A DNA stretch of 64,000 nt from Paramoeba atlantica (lineage: Eukaryota; Protista; Discosea). Under the pieces are notes generated by a model. The model was given only the letters and a program-made list of their open reading frames with translations, did not search any database and was not told where the DNA came from. A program made the translations under genes and the position numbers. The DNA is taken from assembly GCA_977017575.1 (NCBI GenBank), contig CDRNVI010000012.1, positions 558,001 through 622,000 on the forward strand, in the 5' to 3' direction. Below, one piece after another: positions 14,919 to 24,000 of the stretch; positions within the stretch are counted from its first letter, which is position 1; every line of letters begins with the position of its first letter.

Positions 14919-16261
14919 TAAACCCCGCGTCACCAATAAGTGACCCCCCCTTATTTTTAGCACAGGAGGTCGTGGGGGGTTATCATAGCACGTTGTCGTT
15001 CAAAATTTTGAGATCTGTACGTTCCCGCTGTTTTTAGCTCATTTTAAAACTTTAAAATTCAGTCAAAAAAATTTTTTTTTTTCAACTTTTTTTTCAAAAA
15101 TGCCAAAATCACCATATCGACTCCCAAGAGGGGGGCTGACTTCTAGTGGAAAGGTTCTTTTAAAGATGAGGCACGGACAAGGAGTACCAATAAAAGAGCT
15201 AGCCCGTGATTTCAACGTTTCTAGAAGGATAGTTAAAAAATATTTGAACGAAAAAAAAATTACCCCAGTATACACTTTGAGTCCTGAGCGAAAAAAAATA
15301 ATGAAAACTCGTAAAACGAAAATTGAGAAGATAATAACCCCTCTTGACCCCGCTGGAGTACCGAGACTCAATTCATCAAGGCGCATAGCAGCCCAATTGA
15401 AGAAAAAGAATATATAAGTTTCAAAAAGAACTGTACAGAGAGACTTATCATCCCTGGATTGCAGTTATGCCGCTCGACCGCTATGCCAAGGACTTACCAA
15501 ACGACAAAAACTAAAAAGAGTTCAATTTGCGTTGAATTACAATATGGATACTTCCCGTGTCATCTTTACAGACGAAAAAATATTTGATACGAATGATGGC
15601 AGAAGAAAAATGTGGGTAAGGCGCGGTCAAAAAGCAGCCCCGCGTCAAAAAGTACGTTGGGCACCAAGATGCCAAGTTTGGGGTGCTGTAGGAGTGGGGT
15701 GAAGGTACTTGGTAATTCTACAAAATGACACATCTATTACAAGTGAGACGTACATAGAAACATTAAAAGAGGTAGATTTCCCCCCTAATCGTATTTTTCA
15801 GCAAGATGGGGCAACGGCACACACTGCTCGTGCCTCAAAGGAGTACATTGAAAGCGCAATGAGTGAACTTCTGAAAAATTGGCCCCCCAACTCACCAGAT
15901 CTTTCCCCAATAGAAAACGTCTGGTCTATGGTCCAAGGGGCGGTGGACGAACAGACCCCATCGGATAAGCCTTCACTCATCCGATGTGTACGCAAAGCGT
16001 GGTCTCGCTTGTCTCAAAATGTGATCGACAAAACGGTCTTAAGCTTTGACTCACGCCTTAAGGAGTGTATAAGATTGAAAGTCGAAAAAGTGAAAAAATG
16101 GTAATTCCTCAATAAAATATACGTATTCGCTTCTTTTTGTTTCATTTCTTCACGCGCAAAGTCCTTGTGTTGAGATCTGCAAAATGCAACAAAAATAAGC
16201 TCAAACGGACACTTACGGACGAAAAAAAAGTGGGGGGTCACTTTTCATGACGCGAGGTTTA
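14919..16261 (+). mobile_element. Tc1/IS630-like element, DD35E
   Basis: TIRs TAAACCCCGCGTCA...AAGTGACCCCCC and GGGGGGTCACTT...TGACGCGAGGTTTA, with TA flanks. Confidence 0.88.
15100..16104 (+). pseudogene. DD35E transposase with two in-frame stops
   Basis: One frame from 15100 to 16104 with a TAA at 15415 and a TGA near 15700. Motifs IFTDEK, QQDGATAH, WPPNSPDLSPIENVW. Confidence 0.88.
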
Positions 16262-16265
16262 TATA

Positions 16266-17823
16266 CAGGGGTGAAAATCCCATGGTGGGGGGGTCTAAAA
16301 TTCGTAAAATTTGTCCAATTTTGGAAAATAATAGCGCGTTCGAGAGCTCTCGCAGAGTTGTATGTTTTAAGATAGGCAGTTTGCGGGGGTTAGGGGGGTA
16401 CCCCCCTTTGATGGAAGGGTCAAAAACACGATTTGCAAATTTGAAAAACTGTAAAAAATGGTCAAAAATTACCCTTAATACCCACAGGAAGACCCGTTTC
16501 GCTCAATAACGATGCGACAACGCTTGCGGAAACTGCTCATCGTGTTAATACATTCTTGCTTGCGTTCTGATTGTAATCTTTCGAACGCTGTCTCAATGGC
16601 CGATACTAATTCAGCCCGATTCTTGGGTCGAAGATCATTTTTGATGCTGTCCATGGTCCCCCAAAGGTTTTCAATGGTGTTTAAATCGGGGGATTTTGCA
16701 GGCCAAGAGAGTACATTAATACCTTCGTTACGAAAGGTTGTTCGCGCAGAATTATGAACAGGACAATTATCCATTGCAACGACTCCAGATGGGTGGCGCC
16801 TCAAATAATTTAAAAGTCCTTTGCGCTTCTTCATGGCGTCATTGAAAGCATCCCCTGTTACAGTTACTTTTCGGCCGGAAGGGTCGTGGGAGGGAAAAAT
16901 GTGTAGACGAAATCCATGATTTAAACTGACCCCCATCCACACCATGACGCCGTTCCCTCCATACCAAGGTTCTAGCTCTCCCTGCTGTTCCTTGGCGGGG
17001 TCAGTCTTCCGGCAAAGGTAAGTAATTTTGTTTCGTCCCCTACCGCAAGTGAACTTCTTCTCATCGCAGAAAACAATTTGTCTCAGTTGGGTATCTGACC
17101 AAGTGAGCATCTCAGAACAAAAATGCACTCGTTTCCTCTTGTGTTCATCGGTCAGTGCGGGCTTTCTTTTTAAAGTTCGCATGATCATACCATGGCTCTT
17201 CATGGCGTTAACCAAAGTTGGTCTTGAACACTGAAATCCAAGAAAAAGCACAACTCTATGGAGTGCACACCAGTTCTCAATCCCGTACGGGAGGTCACGG
17301 TATCCCTCATCAATGAGGCGGATAGCTGCTTCGTGCAGCGCAGGGGTACTGACAGGAGATGGGCGTGAAATAGGAGAGCTTTCCACGTCTCCAGTGTTCT
17401 CATAGCGTATCACAAGACGTTTTACTGTATTTTCGTGGACGCCGAAGTTTTGGGCTGTCCGAGAATAGGACCCTGTCTCAAGATAATCTGAGACAAGAAG
17501 CATACGGTGACTTGGTATCACCCGTGCGGGGGAGGAATAGGACCTGTCGCTGAGTACACCACGTGAGGTTCGGGAACGAATCCGTTTCTGGGGCATATAG
17601 TGCTAATATTGACTGAAAAACAGCTAAAAACTGAAAAAACGTAAATTTGGGCAAGAAAAAAAATCACGATTTTTTTGGTCTCATCGTTTCATGTTGAGTC
17701 ACAGGCCGCAAATAGTGCTAAAATATACAACTCTGCGAGAGCTCTCGAATGCGCTATTACTTTCCAAAATTGGATAATTTTTACGAATTTTAGCCCCCCC
17801 CCACCACGAGGTTTTCACCCCTG
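16266..17823 (-). mobile_element. Complete Tc1/mariner element, DD32E family
   Basis: About 95-bp imperfect TIRs beginning CAGGGGTGAAAA, with TA on both sides. Confidence 0.92.
16475..17596 (-). CDS. Tc1-like transposase, 373 aa, DD32E spacing
   Basis: Motifs IVFCDEKK, MDNCPVH, WPAKSPDLNTIENLW; 32 residues between the second D and the E. Confidence 0.92.
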   Translation of the reverse strand: MPQKRIRSRTSRGVLSDRSYSSPARVIPSHRMLLVSDYLETGSYSRTAQNFGVHENTVKRLVIRYENTGDVESSPISRPSPVSTPALHEAAIRLIDEGYRDLPYGIENWCALHRVVLFLGFQCSRPTLVNAMKSHGMIMRTLKRKPALTDEHKRKRVHFCSEMLTWSDTQLRQIVFCDEKKFTCGRGRNKITYLCRKTDPAKEQQGELEPWYGGNGVMVWMGVSLNHGFRLHIFPSHDPSGRKVTVTGDAFNDAMKKRKGLLNYLRRHPSGVVAMDNCPVHNSARTTFRNEGINVLSWPAKSPDLNTIENLWGTMDSIKNDLRPKNRAELVSAIETAFERLQSERKQECINTMSSFRKRCRIVIERNGSSCGY

Positions 17824-17853
17824 TATATATATATATATGTGTGTGTGTGTGTG
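17824..17853. repeat. (TA)n(TG)n tract, the displaced 3' flank of HERO-like copy 2
   Basis: Continues the (TA)n run that is interrupted at 13260 by the Tc1 cluster. Confidence 0.7.
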
Positions 17854-18905
17854 AGGGGGGAATATTAATAGGAAGTAAAGCATATTCTCAACACGATTGG
17901 GGTCACCCGCATTGGGAAGTGCTCCGCCCATGGGAAAAATCAGAAGACGTATAATAAATTAACAAGGAGTGAACTGAAGTCTAAGGCGGCATAAATAAGT
18001 GCAGCATAAATATTTTGCTTTTTGAACACGAAAAAGAAGCATCGGAAATATTTATAAACTACTTTTCCAGATGCACTTGATAACATTGAAGAATTGGGAG
18101 CACAACGATTATCAATTTAATATACCGTCAAAGTATTTACCAGCAAAATAAAATCATTGGAATAAACTTTTTGTTGTAAAAATTGGCTGAATGATAATTT
18201 ACAAAATTTACTTTTCAGCGAATCGCATCGTGTTATTGATATTGATTAGGGATTTGGTTTTTATTATTTTCAATTAGCGGACACCCGCCTTCCTCCACTC
18301 TTTTACCGCGGAGGATAGTATCGCGGCGTTGCCTTTTTGAACAGCCACATTAATGGCTTGTAGTGCATGACGCAGGAAACCTTTCCTGTCATACGTATAC
18401 CTTGCGATCTCCTTTAGGAGGAGTACGGTGCGCTTCCCTGCCACACCAAAAACGGTAAATGCAAGGGGGTAGAAATGCATACCCCTTTTCGTGGCCATGT
18501 CACTGTGCGCTTTTACTTTCAAGCTTTCCACCCTTTCTAGAGTGTTGCCAGGCGCTACCCATTCGGCCTTAACATAAGAAGGGACGAGGGGGTTAACGAC
18601 GGTCACGTCCACCAGACATACAGTCAGCAAAAAAACCGTTCGAATGTTTCGGTTTTTTTTTCTTTTGTATAGAGCTATTGATTAAATATCACCGTTGCGC
18701 TGGTAATGTGTGCTAGTAGTGTAGGCATGAGTGTCACCTAATAGTACCCGTAGATAGTTCACCTCAGTTCGTTCTACCAAAGAAATAAGAATGAATATAA
18801 AAAAGTTTAGCATTCGAAAGGTTTTTTTGCTACCTATTATAGAGAAAATCTTGTCCCAAAAAATAGATGAAACGTAATCGCCCAAGAGAGATTATGCCCC
18901 TAAAA

Positions 18906-19916
18906 TTAGTATTTAGTATTCCCCCCACGAGCCTTCAGCACTGCCTTCATACGGGCAGGCATACTGTCCACCTGGGCACGACATACTGAGGGTGGTATGT
19001 TCGCCCATTCCATTTTTACCCTCTCCCACAACTCTCGGACCCCGCTTGGTGGATCATCGTGCGCTGCAAGGCGCCGCTTGAGTTCCCCCCAAACGTTTTC
19101 GATTGGATTTAAGTCAGGGGACTGCGTGGGCCACCGCATGACTTCAAACCCGGTACCCCGGAGGTGCCGTTGCGCACAATGGCTTGTGTGCTTGGGGTCA
19201 TTATCTTGTTGGAAGATGACCATTGGGGGGTCTAGACCCATAGTTTCGATGGAGGGGGCAAGATTCTCTTCAAGAATCTCGACGTACTGTGTGGCGTTCA
19301 GGTTCCCTTGAACTAGACGCACATGCCCCACACCGCTTCGGGACATGCACGCCCAAATCATGATGTGCCCCCCTCCGTACTTTACCGTGGGAATTACCCC
19401 TTTTTCACCCAGTTCCTCCCCCGGGGTCCCCCATGTCCAAAGACTTCCCCCCGTTTCAAAGCGCGAGATCTTCGTCTCGTCCGACCATACAACTGGAGCC
19501 CAGTCGTGCACTGTCCAGTGCTCATGGGCCGTGGCAAAGTCCATCCGAAGCTTGCGATGGCGCTTGGACAGGTAGGGCTTGCGGACACGCTTTCTACCTT
19601 TGTGTCCGAAGCGGTGCATCGAAACTCGGATAGACTGAGGAACAACATCAGCAACGCCCTCGCGGCGCAGCTGAGATGATACCTCTCGCGCAGAATTTCC
19701 GGAGAACACAAGTCGTCGCACACGGCGTGTGCACGGCTCGGAAAGCTTTCGAGGGCGTCCACCCTGCATCCTGAGAGTATCAGGCCTTTCCTTTTTTAAG
19801 ATCATAGAAATTGTTGAGATACTTAAATTTACAGTATCAGAGATGGACCTCATAGACACACCGCTGTCGTAGAGCTCTGCAATTTGTTTCTTTACGTAAC
19901 GTGGTGTGGGCCTCAT
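18906..19916 (-). CDS. Tc1 transposase DD34E, 336 aa
   Basis: Motifs VWSDETK, QQDNDPKH, SPDLNPIENVW, ARGGNTKY. Confidence 0.95.
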   Translation of the reverse strand: MRPTPRYVKKQIAELYDSGVSMRSISDTVNLSISTISMILKKERPDTLRMQGGRPRKLSEPCTRRVRRLVFSGNSAREVSSQLRREGVADVVPQSIRVSMHRFGHKGRKRVRKPYLSKRHRKLRMDFATAHEHWTVHDWAPVVWSDETKISRFETGGSLWTWGTPGEELGEKGVIPTVKYGGGHIMIWACMSRSGVGHVRLVQGNLNATQYVEILEENLAPSIETMGLDPPMVIFQQDNDPKHTSHCAQRHLRGTGFEVMRWPTQSPDLNPIENVWGELKRRLAAHDDPPSGVRELWERVKMEWANIPPSVCRAQVDSMPARMKAVLKARGGNTKY

Positions 19917-20013
19917 ATAGAGTGCAAAATGTAACAGTGTAAGATAAACAATGTAATAGTATAAGATAAACTCTATAACCGAAAATTCTTCTTACCTAAA
20001 ATTCTTATTTTCT

Positions 20014-21024
20014 ATGACGCCCACACCACGTTACGTAAAGAAACAAATTGCAGAGCTCTACGACAGCGGTGTGTCTATGAGGTCCATCTCTGATACTGTA
20101 AATTTAAGTATCTCAACAATTTCTATGATCTTAAAAAAGGAAAGGCCTGATACTCTCAGGATGCAGGGTGGACGCCCTCGAAAGCTTTCCGAGCCGTGCA
20201 CACGCCGTGTGCGACGACTTGTGTTCTCCGGAAATTCTGCGCGAGAGGTATCATCTCAGCTGCGCCGCGAGGGCGTTGCTGATGTTGTTCCTCAGTCTAT
20301 CCGAGTTTCGATGCACCGCTTCGGACACAAAGGTAGAAAGCGTGTCCGCAAGCCCTACCTGTCCAAGCGCCATCGCAAGCTTCGGATGGACTTTGCCACG
20401 GCCCATGAGCACTGGACAGTGCACGACTGGGCTCCAGTTGTATGGTCGGACGAGACGAAGATCTCGCGCTTTGAAACGGGGGGAAGTCCTTGGACATGGG
20501 GGACCCCGGGGGAGGAACTGGGTGAAAAAGGGGTAATTCCCACGGTAAAGTACGGAGGGGGGCACATCATGATTTGGGCGTGCATGTCCCGAAGCGGTGT
20601 GGGGCATGTGCGTCTAGTTCAAGGGAACCTGAACGCCACACAGTACGTCGAGATTCTTGAAGAGAATCTTGCCCCCTCCATCGAAACTATGGGTCTAGAC
20701 CCCCCAATGGTCATCTTCCAACAAGATAATGACCCCAAGCACACAAGCCATTGTGCGCAACGGCACCTCCGGGGTACCGGGTTTGAAGTCATGCGGTGGC
20801 CCCCGCAGTCCCCTGACTTAAATCCAATCGAAAACGTTTGGGGGGAACTCAAGCGGCGCCTTGCAGCGCACGATGATCCACCAAGCGGGGTCCGAGAGTT
20901 GTGGGAGAGGGTAAAAATGGAATGGGCGAACATACCACCCTCAGTATGTCGTGCCCAGGTGGACAGTATGCCTGCCCGTATGAAGGCAGTGCTGAAGGCT
21001 CGTGGGGGGAATACTAAATACTAA
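20014..21024 (+). CDS. Tc1 transposase DD34E, 336 aa; inverted twin of 18906-19916
   Basis: Same motifs; differs from its twin at three visible residues (R2T, L/P, T/P). Confidence 0.95.
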   Translation: MTPTPRYVKKQIAELYDSGVSMRSISDTVNLSISTISMILKKERPDTLRMQGGRPRKLSEPCTRRVRRLVFSGNSAREVSSQLRREGVADVVPQSIRVSMHRFGHKGRKRVRKPYLSKRHRKLRMDFATAHEHWTVHDWAPVVWSDETKISRFETGGSPWTWGTPGEELGEKGVIPTVKYGGGHIMIWACMSRSGVGHVRLVQGNLNATQYVEILEENLAPSIETMGLDPPMVIFQQDNDPKHTSHCAQRHLRGTGFEVMRWPPQSPDLNPIENVWGELKRRLAAHDDPPSGVRELWERVKMEWANIPPSVCRAQVDSMPARMKAVLKARGGNTKY

Positions 21025-24000
21025 TTTTAGGGGCATAATCTCTCTTGGGCGATTACGTTTCATCTATTTTTTGGGACAAGATTTTCTCTATAATAGGTAG
21101 CAAAAAAACCTTTCGAATGCTAAACTTTTTTATATTCATTCTTATTTCTTTGGTAGAACGAACTGAGGTGAACTATCTACGGGTACTATTAGGTGACACT
21201 CATGCCTACACTACTAGCACACATTACCAGCGCAACGGTGATATTTAATCAATAGCTCTATACAAAAGAAAAAAAAACCGAAACATTCGAACGGTTTTTT
21301 TGCTGACTGTATCTTCCCTCCCAGCATAAAGCAGACGTCGGGGCCCTGACCAGCAGAGAATCGGGGTTCATGATTGTCAGGAGTGAATCCGTACTGTCGT
21401 AGCAAGTGCACGAAGGCATTCTTAACAAGTTTGTGGCGAGTGGCCGCAGTGTCGCCTTTGTTAAACAAAATCTTTGTTTGAGAGGATGTCTCCGCACTCA
21501 CATTGTGCGAAAGGGTCCGAAGTAGGTGCTATCAAGTATCGCATGCGCATGGCTGTTTGCCATTCTGCGTCGCGCATGAAGTACTCACCCCGATTCCTAC
21601 GCGCCTCTGTCCATTTGCGCTTTCTCTTGTCCATCAACTGAAGTGAATGGACGTCATGTAGTTCGCTGGTTTCTTTACGCACTGCTGACTTCGACTCTTC
21701 ATATCTTGTCAAGGCAGAACGTCGTCTTTCCATACACCCTAATACCTCAGCTTTTGTGCGAGAATACAGAGTTGCCGCTTGCTGCGCAAAAGGTTTCGCC
21801 CCCAAAAGGTCGCCCGTCATGAGAGTACTGTGAAACGGGTTCTTTTCCAGGTCTTCGAAGCCTCCTAGCAGCTCTGAGGCACACTCCTGTATGGCCTTGT
21901 CCGCTAACACGTTGGCTTTTGCCGTTACCTCCGGCTCATGACACCGCATTAGGTAGTCCCACCGGGGGACTCCACATCTCTTCAGCAAAATGTAAGCACT
22001 TTGTAACGAGAGATGTTGCAGCCGATCCAGGAATGTCTGCAATTTAGGCATTTGGTTGACTACCCATCTGGTTTCATCCGCGCCTTCCTTGGAGACGAAT
22101 GCACCTAAGAGCTTTTGTCCTTGCTCCGCATGCTCTATGTTCATACCTCTGAAAGGAGCGTACTGGTCATTGAAATGCGTCGAAAGCTTACATTTGGCCG
22201 GATGTACCTCGAGTCCTATTCCCGAAGCGTGATCACAGAGAGCGCCAAACGCCTGTGCGACACGTTCTGCCGGGCCGATGATTGAAAGGTCGTCTAGGTA
22301 AGCCCAAAGCGTCAGATCACTGAACTCATCCTTCAATTTTCCAAGAATTTGGTGCAAGCCGAGAGAAAACAGTAACGGTCCTAATGGGTCGCCTTGTCGG
22401 ACTCCCCTCAGAACCTTAGTCGGCGAACACGACGAGTTAAATATCGTAGTTGGAGCCCCATATACATATGAGGTCACCCCGTATAGCTCGTGAAATTCAT
22501 CATTTCCCCTTAGATACTGAAACACCGCGCTTCTTTCAATTGAATTGAAGGCGTTACGGATGTCTACTGTCAAGAGCACAAAGTCCGCTTTTTGACGAAA
22601 CGCGTTTCTTGCCCTTAATATTATTTTAGGTCCTCCGTTTCTTGTTCCAACACCAAATTGTGTATCTTGGAAAAGTCTGCCCGTTGCTTCTGCTACCCTG
22701 TCCATGGCGATTTGGCTAGCCAATTTAAGAAAGATTTCCCCCATTGCTATAGGTCGGCAGGCTGGGGATCCTTCTACGGAAGGGCCCTCCTTGCGCAGCA
22801 AGATCAGAGTGGAGCTGGTTAAGACGTCCCTTAGCTGAGCGTCTCGGGAGTTTCGCAGCACTGCTGTAGCTATCCAAGTAACGCAGGCCACGATATCCTG
22901 GTCCTCTAGGAGCGGTATAAGAAGTTCGCGTGTCCAGCCTGATGGGCCCGGCGCGGATCCTTTGGCGAGCTTTCTAGCCCTGTCAGTTAAGGTTTGCTTT
23001 TCGATGTCCATAGATTTTGCCGGGAAATGTTAATAAACCCGAAAGGCCTTTGGGTGAAGTCGATCTATGGCCTTAGCGATCTCTTCAGTAGATAGTGGTT
23101 GTCGTTCCTTCGCCTCTAGCGCTTTTGCCGCTTTCCCGATCGCACCAAGTTTAAGCAGTGCCTCTGCTCGGCCTACCGGGTTAAACTTTGCCACACTTTT
23201 GGTTGCAAGCGAAGGGGTAAATTTTGGTTCTTGCTCGGCCATCCGCTTTCGTAGTTCATACGCCAGTTGCCGATGAGTCAGTTGACTTTCGGGCAGGAAT
23301 AAGAACTGCTTCACTGCGCATAATAGGTTCCACGACATCTTTGCTTTTGTGTCTGTGTGTTGTACTTCAAAGTCTCTGCATATTCCACCGCATAATTCCT
23401 TCCAGCACGGTAATTGCAGGTGATATAATTTACGCAGACTAGGTCGCGTAATCAGTTTTGTGTATGTTTCCCGCAGGCTTTGTATTTCGTGGAGTTGACG
23501 AGGCGGAAGATTTGTCGTATTACACAGTTTCTGTGAGATATGCGATCCCGATTGAACCTCTTTGGTTGAACAATCTTCGAATATTCCTCCAGCCATCTTC
23601 TCCAGTATGGTCCCACGTGGGACTGCTTCTGAGGCCCCAGATATGCAAGGGCTTCCAGGGTGAATTTCTTCCAGATTCAACACATCTTTAACTCTTGTTT
23701 TGCTTCCCTTGGGCCGGCCGCGTGGGCGCTCCGGGCCTGGGTTTTCCTCTATCGTCGAGCCTGCTTGGATCTGAAGTGACCCGAGATCCAACGAACCTGA
23801 AGGTGTGAACTTTCTTCCGGGGGGTCGGCCCCTCTTCTTACCCGGTCCGGGGTTGCTTTCAATGCAGCCCCGGATCAGCTGGGTGCGTACTTGCGCTTTG
23901 GACCAACCAGAGTTGGCGATGACGTTTTTAGTTGACCGGAAACACCACACTGCCCGTGGGCCGGGGTTGCTCTCAATACCCCCTCTTATTAACCATGTAT

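What the first reader, a model, noticed from the sequence alone, without database searches (positions are those of the whole stretch)
18621..21309. Palindromic 2.7-kb Tc1 with two divergent intact transposases that apparently transposed as one unit
Seen: two 1296-bp inverted arms, each a whole transposase ORF plus 3' end, meet ATG-to-ATG across a 97-bp AT-rich spacer that has no TIR. Both outer ends read TA|CAGTCAGCAAAA. Removing the element and one TA restores the host CRE endonuclease frame exactly (GPDVCFMLGGK-I-CLVDVTVVNP). The arms differ at only about three visible codons. Inference: a mobile element whose effective TIRs contain the transposase gene, possibly with a bidirectional promoter and kept homogeneous by fold-back conversion.
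Basis: partly seen in the sequence, partly recalled or inferred. Interest (0 to 1): 0.8.

Follow-up and report, generated by a model that had tools for sequence, protein, structure and literature searches.

The report
Mirror-image Tc1 transposon, two transposase genes
This is a real, recently active cut-and-paste jumping gene built as a near-perfect mirror image with a complete transposase gene in each half; its relatives elsewhere are ordinary single-gene elements, so the end repeats here grew inward over the whole gene, a layout I found no paper describing for this transposon superfamily.

Summary
Window 18621-21309 is a 2,689-bp element with 1,297-nt inverted arms that differ at 3 bases. 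A 95-nt AT-rich core separates the arms, and the element has TA duplications and CAGT ends. Each arm holds an intact 336-aa DD34E Tc1 transposase.

It is not an assembly artefact. The same structure sits at two to three other loci with different flanks and TA duplications. An otherwise identical host copy on contig C2 is empty with a single TA. Both arm-specific proteins are on record in ENA for a 59,880-bp contig.

- **Arm-to-arm copying.** Variants private to one element occur on both of its arms.
- **An old layout.** A family at 51% protein identity, a subfamily of it (dS about 1, dN/dS 0.11-0.16) and a third family share the build, and their arms always end at the ATG.
- **A derived layout.** All 80 metagenomic relatives fetched have one gene. 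About 60 of them show TIRs, up to about 215 bp where the contig holds both ends, built like the terminal module at each tip here. So the TIR grew inward over the gene.

The bidirectional promoter remains untested. This scan had already reported the same family at another locus (s1-396064).

The parts
18619..18620 (.). Left copy of the TA target-site duplication
   Evidence: The empty site on C2 has one TA.
18621..19917 (-). Left arm (1,297 nt): terminal module, 3' UTR and the whole transposase gene
   Evidence: Inverted repeat I1, with 3 mismatches to the right arm.
18621..18836 (-). Left terminal module of about 216 nt. The outer site is 18621-18658. An inverted inner site lies at 18799-18831. 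A conserved central block lies between them.
   Evidence: I2. The module is conserved in four families. The same plan forms the TIRs of metagenomic monomers.
18906..19916 (-). Transposase gene A, 336 aa, intact (R2, L159, T264)
   Evidence: Pfam DDE_3 and HTH_Tnp_Tc3_2. Identical to ENA protein P0127.
19918..20012 (.). Unique, non-palindromic AT-rich core of 95 nt with a 22-nt tandem duplication. Each gene's sense strand looks pyrimidine-rich just upstream of its ATG (read by eye).
   Evidence: (GC 0.25), D6, spacer comparison.
20014..21024 (+). Transposase gene B, 336 aa, intact (T2, P159, P264), with DD34E triad D146, D238, E273
   Evidence: (Sleeping Beauty catalytic domain 5cr4, E 1.2e-56). 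Identical to ENA protein P0121.
20013..21309 (+). Right arm (1,297 nt)
21094..21309 (+). Right terminal module. The inner site is 21099-21131 and the outer site is 21272-21309.
   Evidence: I3. Alignment A2. As single-stranded DNA the two sites pair, z-score -4.0.
21310..21311 (.). Right copy of the TA target-site duplication
18274..18620 (-). Host: distal part of the interrupted ORF of an RLE-type (CRE-like) non-LTR retroelement
   Evidence: The frame is restored across the junction.
21312..23011 (-). Host: proximal part of the same retroelement ORF (RT domain, then the PD...DVTV endonuclease region split by the insertion)
   Evidence: RVT_1 E 5.6e-18. Junction peptide.

Best explanation
This is an autonomous cut-and-paste DNA transposon of the Tc1 family (DD34E). 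Its terminal inverted repeats have grown inward from an ancestral two-site end module of about 215 bp to 1,297 bp, taking in the whole transposase gene. The element therefore carries two intact genes reading outward from a 95-nt unique AT-rich core.

Shown:
- It inserts at TA and moves as one 2.69-kb unit using the two outermost modules.
- It has been active recently.
- Its arms are kept alike by arm-to-arm copying.
- The layout is shared by several deeply diverged families in this genome.
- The transposase stayed under purifying selection while the layout persisted.

Inferred:
- The duplication arose once, by template switching across the TIRs during gap repair or by fusion of two head-to-head copies with loss of the inner ends.
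- The many one-armed copies come from abortive gap repair or from palindrome instability.
- The core drives or permits outward expression of both genes.
For: **Structure.**

**Family identity.**
- Pfam DDE_3 and HTH_Tnp_Tc3_2.
- Sleeping Beauty catalytic domain E 1.2e-56.
- D146/D238/E273 with 34-residue spacing.

**Mobility as a unit.**
- Complete copies at C12, C11 and C6 have unrelated flanks and TA|CAGT...ACTG|TA ends. A fourth at C42 runs off its contig.
- There is an empty site with one TA at C2:388588-388589.

**Not an artefact.**
- Both arm-specific proteins (P0121, P0127) are each recorded in ENA for a contig of 59,880 bp, whereas the window's contig is 1.2 Mb.
- Deletion derivatives keep 18-283 nt of the second arm. 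Two kinds keep 7-11 nt of the second terminus, flanked by TA.

**Arm copying.**
- C11 and C6 have 0 substitutions between arms, while different elements differ by 3-8.
- Private variants sit on both arms of one element: alignment column 126 in C12, 1242 in C11 and 1183 in C6.

**Age of the layout.**
- Family 2 (51% aa identity) has a 2,667-bp palindrome at C30 with a TA duplication. A centrally deleted copy at C56 (1,238-nt arms) also has one.
- Subfamily F2b has a palindrome at C12:421742-424356. F3 at C15 keeps a head-to-head remnant.
- F2 versus F2b gives dS about 1.0 and dN/dS 0.11-0.16.
- F1, F3, F2 and F2b group together on the tree with SH-aLRT 84, apart from the 70 metagenomic rows that entered it.

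**Derived state.**
- All 80 metagenomic relatives have a single gene.
- About 60 of the 80 show flanking inverted repeats, from about 20 to 241 nt, and about 215 nt where the contig holds both ends whole. Many contigs cut the ends short.
- The nine TIRs I read through are built like the end module here.
Against: - No expression or transposition data exist, so activity is inferred from sequence identity, intact ORFs and one empty site.
- The C2 empty site could be a paralogue rather than an allele.
- Support for one origin of the layout is moderate (SH-aLRT 81-94, quick tree, long outgroup branch). Three other families in the genome (C8, C90, C29) were seen only as decayed copies, so their build is unknown.
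- Most copies are one-ended and dead, which shows the palindrome is costly or unstable.
- Whether both genes are needed or even expressed is unknown. All 3 arm differences in this copy are nonsynonymous.
Confidence: 0.85

Rival explanations
1. Assembly artefact: a single-gene element was wrongly folded back on itself by the assembler.
For: Perfect long palindromes are a known failure mode of some long-read chemistries and assemblers. The arms are 99.8-100% identical.
Against: - The same structure, with the same 95-nt core, is found at 3-4 loci with different flanks and exact TA duplications.
- Arm-specific SNPs are reproduced in ENA gene calls on a contig of another size.
- Deletion derivatives hold partial second arms.
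- Diverged subfamilies (82-86% nt) and a family at 51% aa identity share the build.
Confidence: 0.02
2. The palindrome is made afresh at each locus. A one-armed element transposes, and a fold-back duplication after insertion creates the second arm.
For: One-armed copies far outnumber complete ones. Arms within an element are more alike than arms of different elements.
Against: - One-armed copies have only one end module, so they lack a second functional end.
- They carry leftovers of the second arm starting exactly at the shared core, so they descend from palindromes.
- The core and both junctions are the same at every locus.
- TA duplications flank the whole palindrome, and the empty site matches that.
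Confidence: 0.05
3. A composite transposon in the Tn5/Tn630 sense: two complete, separately mobile elements that happen to lie head to head and sometimes move together.
For: The two genes read outward as in Tn630-NC1 (PMC11544213). The outer ends are perfectly matched.
Against: - No inner ends exist. The arms stop at the ATG, and the core has no CAGT or AAAAAA-GTTC site.
- No cargo is present.
- No free single-gene copy with two ends was found in the genome.
Confidence: 0.05

Closest known systems
Tc1 family transposons with bipartite long TIRs (Sleeping Beauty, Minos, Tc3 and Bari-type IR/DR elements)
   Same: DD34E transposase. The match to the Sleeping Beauty catalytic domain has E 1.2e-56. 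It shares a paired-type HTH N-terminus, a TA target, CAGT termini, and two repeated sites per end about 160 nt apart.
   Different: Here the inner site is inverted relative to the outer one, not direct. That IR/DR sites are direct is from my own knowledge. The repeat extends 1,297 nt to include a complete second gene. A survey of the superfamily describes a single ORF and TIRs of about 30 bp up to several hundred bp (PMC7325037).
Single-gene metagenomic relatives (40-52% aa identity, loci L059-L138)
   Same: Same transposase clade. The nine TIRs I read (about 215 nt) have the same plan as the terminal module here: TA|CAGT..AAAAAA..GT..AATG, and about 160-185 nt inward its inverted copy.
   Different: They have one gene, total length of about 1.6-1.7 kb by my estimate, and the module at both ends. 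None of the 80 shows a head-to-head second gene.
Tn630-NC1, a bacterial composite of two IS630 copies (PMC11544213)
   Same: Same superfamily. Two transposase genes in inverted orientation read from the body outward, with perfectly matched outer ends.
   Different: Tn630-NC1 keeps both inner ends and carries four cargo genes, and its IS copies are degenerate. Here there are no inner ends, no cargo and a 95-nt core, and both genes are intact.
Long-TIR and foldback-like DNA transposons (Galileo 0.5-1.2 kb TIRs; Tec about 700 bp; a Sailor copy with 1,362-bp TIRs)
   Same: Very long inverted arms make up much of the element (PMC3688188; PMC7325037; PMC8533490).
   Different: In those descriptions the TIRs are non-coding, often internally repetitive, and flank one transposase gene. 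Here each arm is the gene itself.

Membership tests
Tc1/mariner superfamily, Tc1 family (DD34E) | DDE catalytic triad with 34 residues between the second D and the E | tested here: met
   D146, D238 and E273 are invariant in alignment A1, with spacing 34. The protein aligns along its whole catalytic domain to Sleeping Beauty 5cr4, E 1.2e-56.
Tc1/mariner superfamily, Tc1 family (DD34E) | N-terminal paired-like helix-turn-helix DNA-binding region | tested here: met
   Pfam HTH_Tnp_Tc3_2 32.3 bits (cut-off 31.5). Weak HTH_SB, HTH_38 and HTH_7 hits at residues 9-42.
Tc1/mariner superfamily, Tc1 family (DD34E) | TA target-site duplication and CAGT termini | tested here: met
   TA|CAGT...ACTG|TA at C12, C11 and C6 (both ends) and at the one readable end of the C42 copy, and in family 2 copies. 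The empty site has one TA.
Tc1/mariner superfamily, Tc1 family (DD34E) | Usual architecture: one transposase ORF between short to medium TIRs | tested here: not met
   Two ORFs, each inside a 1,297-nt TIR. This is a matter of layout, not of ancestry.
IR/DR-type Tc1 elements | Two transposase-binding repeats per end in direct orientation | tested here: not met
   Two repeats per end are present but in inverted orientation (I2/I3). Binding itself is not testable here.
Composite transposon (Tn5, Tn10, Tn630 type) | Two complete insertion sequences, each with an inner and an outer end, flanking cargo | tested here: not met
   No inner ends and no cargo; the centre is a 95-nt core.
Foldback elements | Long inverted arms that are non-coding and built of subrepeats | tested here: not met
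   The arms are long (met), but 78% of each arm is an intact coding sequence.

The most novel reading that the evidence does not exclude
The twin-gene mirror layout may be an adaptation rather than an accident. The AT-rich core would act as a miniature divergent start region. Both genes would then be transcribed outward without any host promoter and without antisense RNA. Read-through from outside would instead make a perfect 1.3-kb hairpin RNA that feeds the host's Argonaute pathway. That would give a built-in switch between autonomy and self-silencing, and could explain how the layout outlasted a protein divergence of about 50%.
Probability: 0.2. Interest if true: 0.8.

Novelty: new variant of a known kind. 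Interest (0 to 1): 0.6.

Why it matters
- **TIR length can evolve a long way.** A TIR can swallow the element's own gene, and the result can stay mobile and last through deep divergence.
- **A natural system for studying long palindromes.** It lets one ask how a eukaryotic genome tolerates 1.3-kb perfect palindromes, how fast inverted arms homogenise, and how such elements decay.
- **A link to RNA silencing.** Any read-through transcript would be a long hairpin, and the genome does encode Piwi-domain proteins.
- **A caution for TE annotation.** Pipelines that expect one ORF and short TIRs would split or mislabel these elements.
- **An independent check.** This scan had already reported the family at another locus, so this report is a confirmation and extension, not a first sighting.

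Tried and rejected
- **Genome allowance.** The empty site on C2 was therefore shown by coordinates only. Intact copies of the C8, C90 and C29 families could not be fetched.
- **Large flank searches.** The 10-kb flank searches were swamped by repeats and did not settle whether C2 is the allele of C12. Three collinear pairs between C12 and C2 in other searches suggest homology.
- **Flanks of the C11 copy.** These flanks are themselves repeats, so no empty allele could be shown. The C6 copy was not tried.
- **Organism identity.** No host gene lies in the window: of the ten further ORFs of 250 aa or more that I scanned, the five with a Pfam hit are all reverse transcriptase. The RT search returned only unnamed ENA relatives. 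'Kinetoplastid-like' comes from earlier scan notes and is unverified here.
- **Rfam.** The only hit is MIR841 at 19845-20084, 78.9 bits against a gathering score of 200. It is the central hairpin shape matching a hairpin model, not a miRNA.
- **Trans-splice acceptor.** I looked for an acceptor (polypyrimidine tract followed by AG) between the core and either ATG. There are pyrimidine tracts but no AG before the ATG, by eye.
- **Literature.** Searches for a twin-transposase or palindromic Tc1 found none. The library lacks most subscription journals and Repbase, so this is not proof of absence.
Full report

Yes. The region 18621-21309 is 2,689 bp. The repeat finder reports one inverted pair, 18618-19917 and 20013-21312. 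That is 1,297 nt of element per arm plus TA plus one chance base.

My base-by-base comparison finds three mismatches: 19127/20803, 19441/20489 and 19912/20018. All three change an amino acid, at codons 264 (T/P), 159 (L/P) and 2 (R/T).

The unique centre is 19918-20012. It is 95 nt with GC 0.25, against 0.49 for the element and 0.46 for the window. It contains a 22-nt tandem duplication (D6).

Each end reads TA|CAGTCAGCAAAA. ORFs 18906-19916 (-) and 20014-21024 (+) are both 336 aa and open.

**2. What are the genes?**

- Both ORFs hit Pfam DDE_3 (E 9e-16 and 4e-15) and HTH_Tnp_Tc3_2.
- The protein matches the catalytic domain of Sleeping Beauty (5cr4) over residues 107-336, E 1.2e-56.
- D146, D238 and E273 are invariant among relatives and give DD34E spacing.
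- This is a standard Tc1-family transposase.

**3. Did it move as one unit, and is it an artefact?**

A search of the window's own 45.7-Mb assembly finds the complete structure at three further places:

| Contig | Coordinates | State |
|---|---|---|
| C11 | 309756-312443 | complete |
| C6 | 208773-211461 | complete |
| C42 | 181365-183755 | cut by the contig end |

Flanks are unrelated. The C12, C11 and C6 copies are bounded by TA|CAGT...ACTG|TA on both sides, and the one readable end of the C42 copy has the same boundary.

The host here is an RT-bearing, RLE-type non-LTR retroelement (RVT_1). Taking out the element and one TA restores an open frame...GPDVCFMLGGKICLVDVTVVNP.... PD...DVTV is the pattern I know from R2/CRE-type endonucleases; that rests on my own knowledge.

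A natural empty site exists. C2:388119-388589 equals the left flank at 100% and C2:388588-389078 equals the right flank at 100%. They overlap by 2 bp, which is one TA. Other copies of the host element overlap by 2 bp in the same way.

The two arm-specific proteins of this very copy are each on record in ENA for a contig of 59,880 bp (P0121 and P0127). The window's own contig is 1.2 Mb. This points to a second assembly with the same two variants.

Together with the diverged copies described below, an assembly artefact is very unlikely.

**4. The rest of the family**

About 37 further copies of the end module at 97-100% identity belong to defective copies. Most keep one whole arm, the core, and 18, 45, 96 or 283 nt of the second arm.

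Two kinds still have the far terminus. One has 11 nt (TA|CAGTCAGCAAA) joined straight to the second arm (L004/L005). The other has 7 nt plus filler (L014/L015). Both have TA on each side.

Such internal deletions are what abortive gap repair after excision produces in cut-and-paste elements (established knowledge). Palindrome instability could add to them. They descend from palindromes and not the reverse, because every one starts from the shared core.

Many defective copies occur as pairs with the same flanks on two contigs (C60/C51, C24/C74, C37/C39 and others). The assembly therefore seems to hold two haplotypes or a recent duplication.

**5. Arm-to-arm copying**

In an alignment of all arms:
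- The C11 and C6 elements have 0 substitutions between their own arms.
- C12 has 3.
- Arms of different elements differ by 3-8.

Several variants are private to one element yet present on both of its arms. Column 126 is G in both C12 arms only. Column 1242 is T in both C11 arms only. Column 1183 is A in both C6 arms.

A mutation arises on one arm, so these variants must have been copied across.

The route was not tested. It could be gene conversion between inverted repeats, repair of a fold-back heteroduplex, or template switching during gap repair.

**6. The layout is old**

The protein P0002 (51% identical) is encoded in the same genome and defines a second family with the same build:

| Family | Locus | Structure |
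|---|---|---|
| F2 | C30 | 1,306-nt arms, 3 mismatches, 55-nt core, TA|CAGTAACTAAC ends |
| F2 | C56 | 1,238-nt arms; centre deleted (core and gene starts lost); TA duplication |
| F2b (about 80% aa to F2) | C12:421742-424356 | palindromic |
| F3 (about 47% aa) | C15 | keeps a head-to-head remnant |

Older relatives of family 1, at 82-86% nucleotide identity, are also derived from palindromes.

In F1, F2 and F3 the arms end at the ATG, give or take one base, and the core is AT-rich (GC 0.25-0.31) but hardly alignable between families.

F2 versus F2b gives dS about 1.0 and dN/dS 0.11-0.16. Copies within a subfamily give about 1. The transposase was therefore under selection while the layout persisted.

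On a tree, F1, F3, F2 and F2b group together (SH-aLRT 84-98), apart from the metagenomic relatives. Support is moderate and the outgroup branch is long.

**7. The layout is derived**

A scan of metagenome contigs gave 80 relatives at 34-52% identity. All have one gene. The single two-strand hit, L138, is to a distant 30%-identical ORF.

About 60 of the 80 show inverted repeats flanking the gene, from about 20 to 241 nt. They are about 215 nt where the contig holds both ends whole; many contigs are too short to hold both ends.

In the nine TIRs I read through, each is a module with three features:
- TA|CAGT at the tip.
- A site of the form AAAAAA..GT..AATG.
- An inverted copy of that site about 160-185 nt inward.

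The last 216 nt of each arm here have the same plan (I2/I3). The module is conserved across F1, F2, F2b and F3, including an invariant central block AGTAGTGTA, flanked by GC.

So the ancestor was module - 5' UTR - gene - module. Here the left module has been extended by an inverted copy of the gene. The same window holds a classic single-gene Tc1-like element at 16260-17829 with about 115-bp TIRs. The genome therefore does not turn every Tc1 into a palindrome.

**8. How it most likely works**

Shown:
- TA insertion and unit mobility.
- Arm homogenisation.
- Purifying selection on the gene.
- A derived, shared layout.

Inferred:
- A transposase made from either gene binds the outer and inner sites of both modules and cuts at the CAGT tips. 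Single arms cannot move because they have one end only.
- The origin was a single inward TIR extension, or two head-to-head copies that lost their inner ends.
- The arms stop at the ATG because the inner border of homology erodes until selection on the coding sequence halts it.

Untested:
- Whether the core promotes outward transcription. Each ATG is preceded on its own sense strand by a pyrimidine-rich stretch, and one side carries a TTTAC-type motif in every family (my reading of the sequences).

Outward transcripts from the two arms would be identical, not complementary. Read-through from outside would make a perfect 1.3-kb hairpin. The genome encodes Piwi-domain proteins.

**9. Comparison with what is known**

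By ancestry the element is a member of the Tc1 family, because every defining protein and target feature is met. Its layout departs from the family in three ways:
- There are two genes.
- The genes lie inside the TIRs.
- The two sites per end are inverted rather than direct.

A survey of the superfamily describes one ORF and TIRs from about 30 bp to several hundred (PMC7325037). The longest TIRs I found described are Tec at about 700 bp, one Sailor copy at 1,362 bp (PMC8533490) and Galileo at up to 1.2 kb (PMC3688188).

The nearest two-gene analogue is the bacterial composite Tn630-NC1. Its genes also read outward, but it keeps its inner ends and carries cargo (PMC11544213).

I found no paper describing a twin-transposase Tc1. 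The library is incomplete, so this is not proof of absence.

**10. Earlier notes of this scan**

s1-396064 is a 2,391-letter piece whose length equals the C42 copy. A follow-up agent already read it as a mirror-image twin-transposase Tc1 that moves as a unit and is an old family trait. s1-370232 notes a 2.5-kb palindromic Tc1 elsewhere. My tests agree with both.

This report adds:
- The empty site.
- The symmetric private variants.
- The single-gene metagenomic relatives and the origin of the module.
- The selection estimate.
- The tree.

Their suggestion that the host is a kinetoplastid-like protist was not tested here.

**Limits**

Noticed in passing
window 16260-17829: A classic single-gene Tc1-like element lies next door. 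It has TIRs of about 115 bp (TATATACAGGGG...) and one 373-aa DDE_3/HTH_Tnp_Tc3_2 ORF (16475-17596, minus strand). It shows the genome also holds ordinary Tc1 layouts.
   Followed up: partly
window 21094-21309 and 18621-18836; L041, L051, L056: Inside the end module a short central block (AGTAGTGTA, then G or C, then GC, read from the tip inward) is invariant across four families whose coding sequences are saturated at silent sites. Its function is unknown. It could be a third binding site or a 3'-end signal.
   Followed up: partly
L007/L011 (C21, C166) and L012/L013 (C24, C74), just outside the right end: A second short fragment of the terminus (8-15 nt ending in TGCTGACTG, followed by TA) lies 10-20 nt beyond the true end, amid TA-rich filler. 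These may be footprints or aborted insertions.
   Followed up: no
G000 contig pairs C12/C2, C60/C51, C24/C74, C37/C39, C5/C27, C23/C14, C30/C3, C29/C16: Defective copies recur in pairs with the same structure and near-identical flanks on two contigs. Matches between C12 and C2 are collinear. The assembly seems to hold two haplotypes or a recent large duplication.
   Followed up: partly
G000:C49:216883-217881, C49:237623-238621, C29:781160-806353 (three loci), C26:37638-38294, C42:115027-115683: The genome encodes several open reading frames of about 925-975 aa with a Piwi domain (118 bits for five of them). An Argonaute-type pathway is therefore probably present.
   Followed up: no
window 1-64000: The window is almost wholly transposable elements. 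Of the ten further ORFs of 250 aa or more that I scanned, five hit Pfam and all five are reverse transcriptase. No ordinary host gene was found.
   Followed up: partly
L059-L138 (metagenome contigs, 40-52% aa relatives): A large, diverse clade of Tc1 elements, which I estimate at about 1.65 kb, is common in these contigs; the sample names were not checked. In the nine TIRs I read through (about 215 bp), each is itself a small inverted-repeat unit with outer and inner sites in opposite orientation. The hosts are unknown, and some database entries label such proteins as bacterial IS630.
   Followed up: partly
window 19845-20084: Rfam MIR841 matches the centre of the palindrome at 78.9 bits, far below its gathering score of 200. 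This is a hairpin-shape match, not a microRNA.
   Followed up: yes
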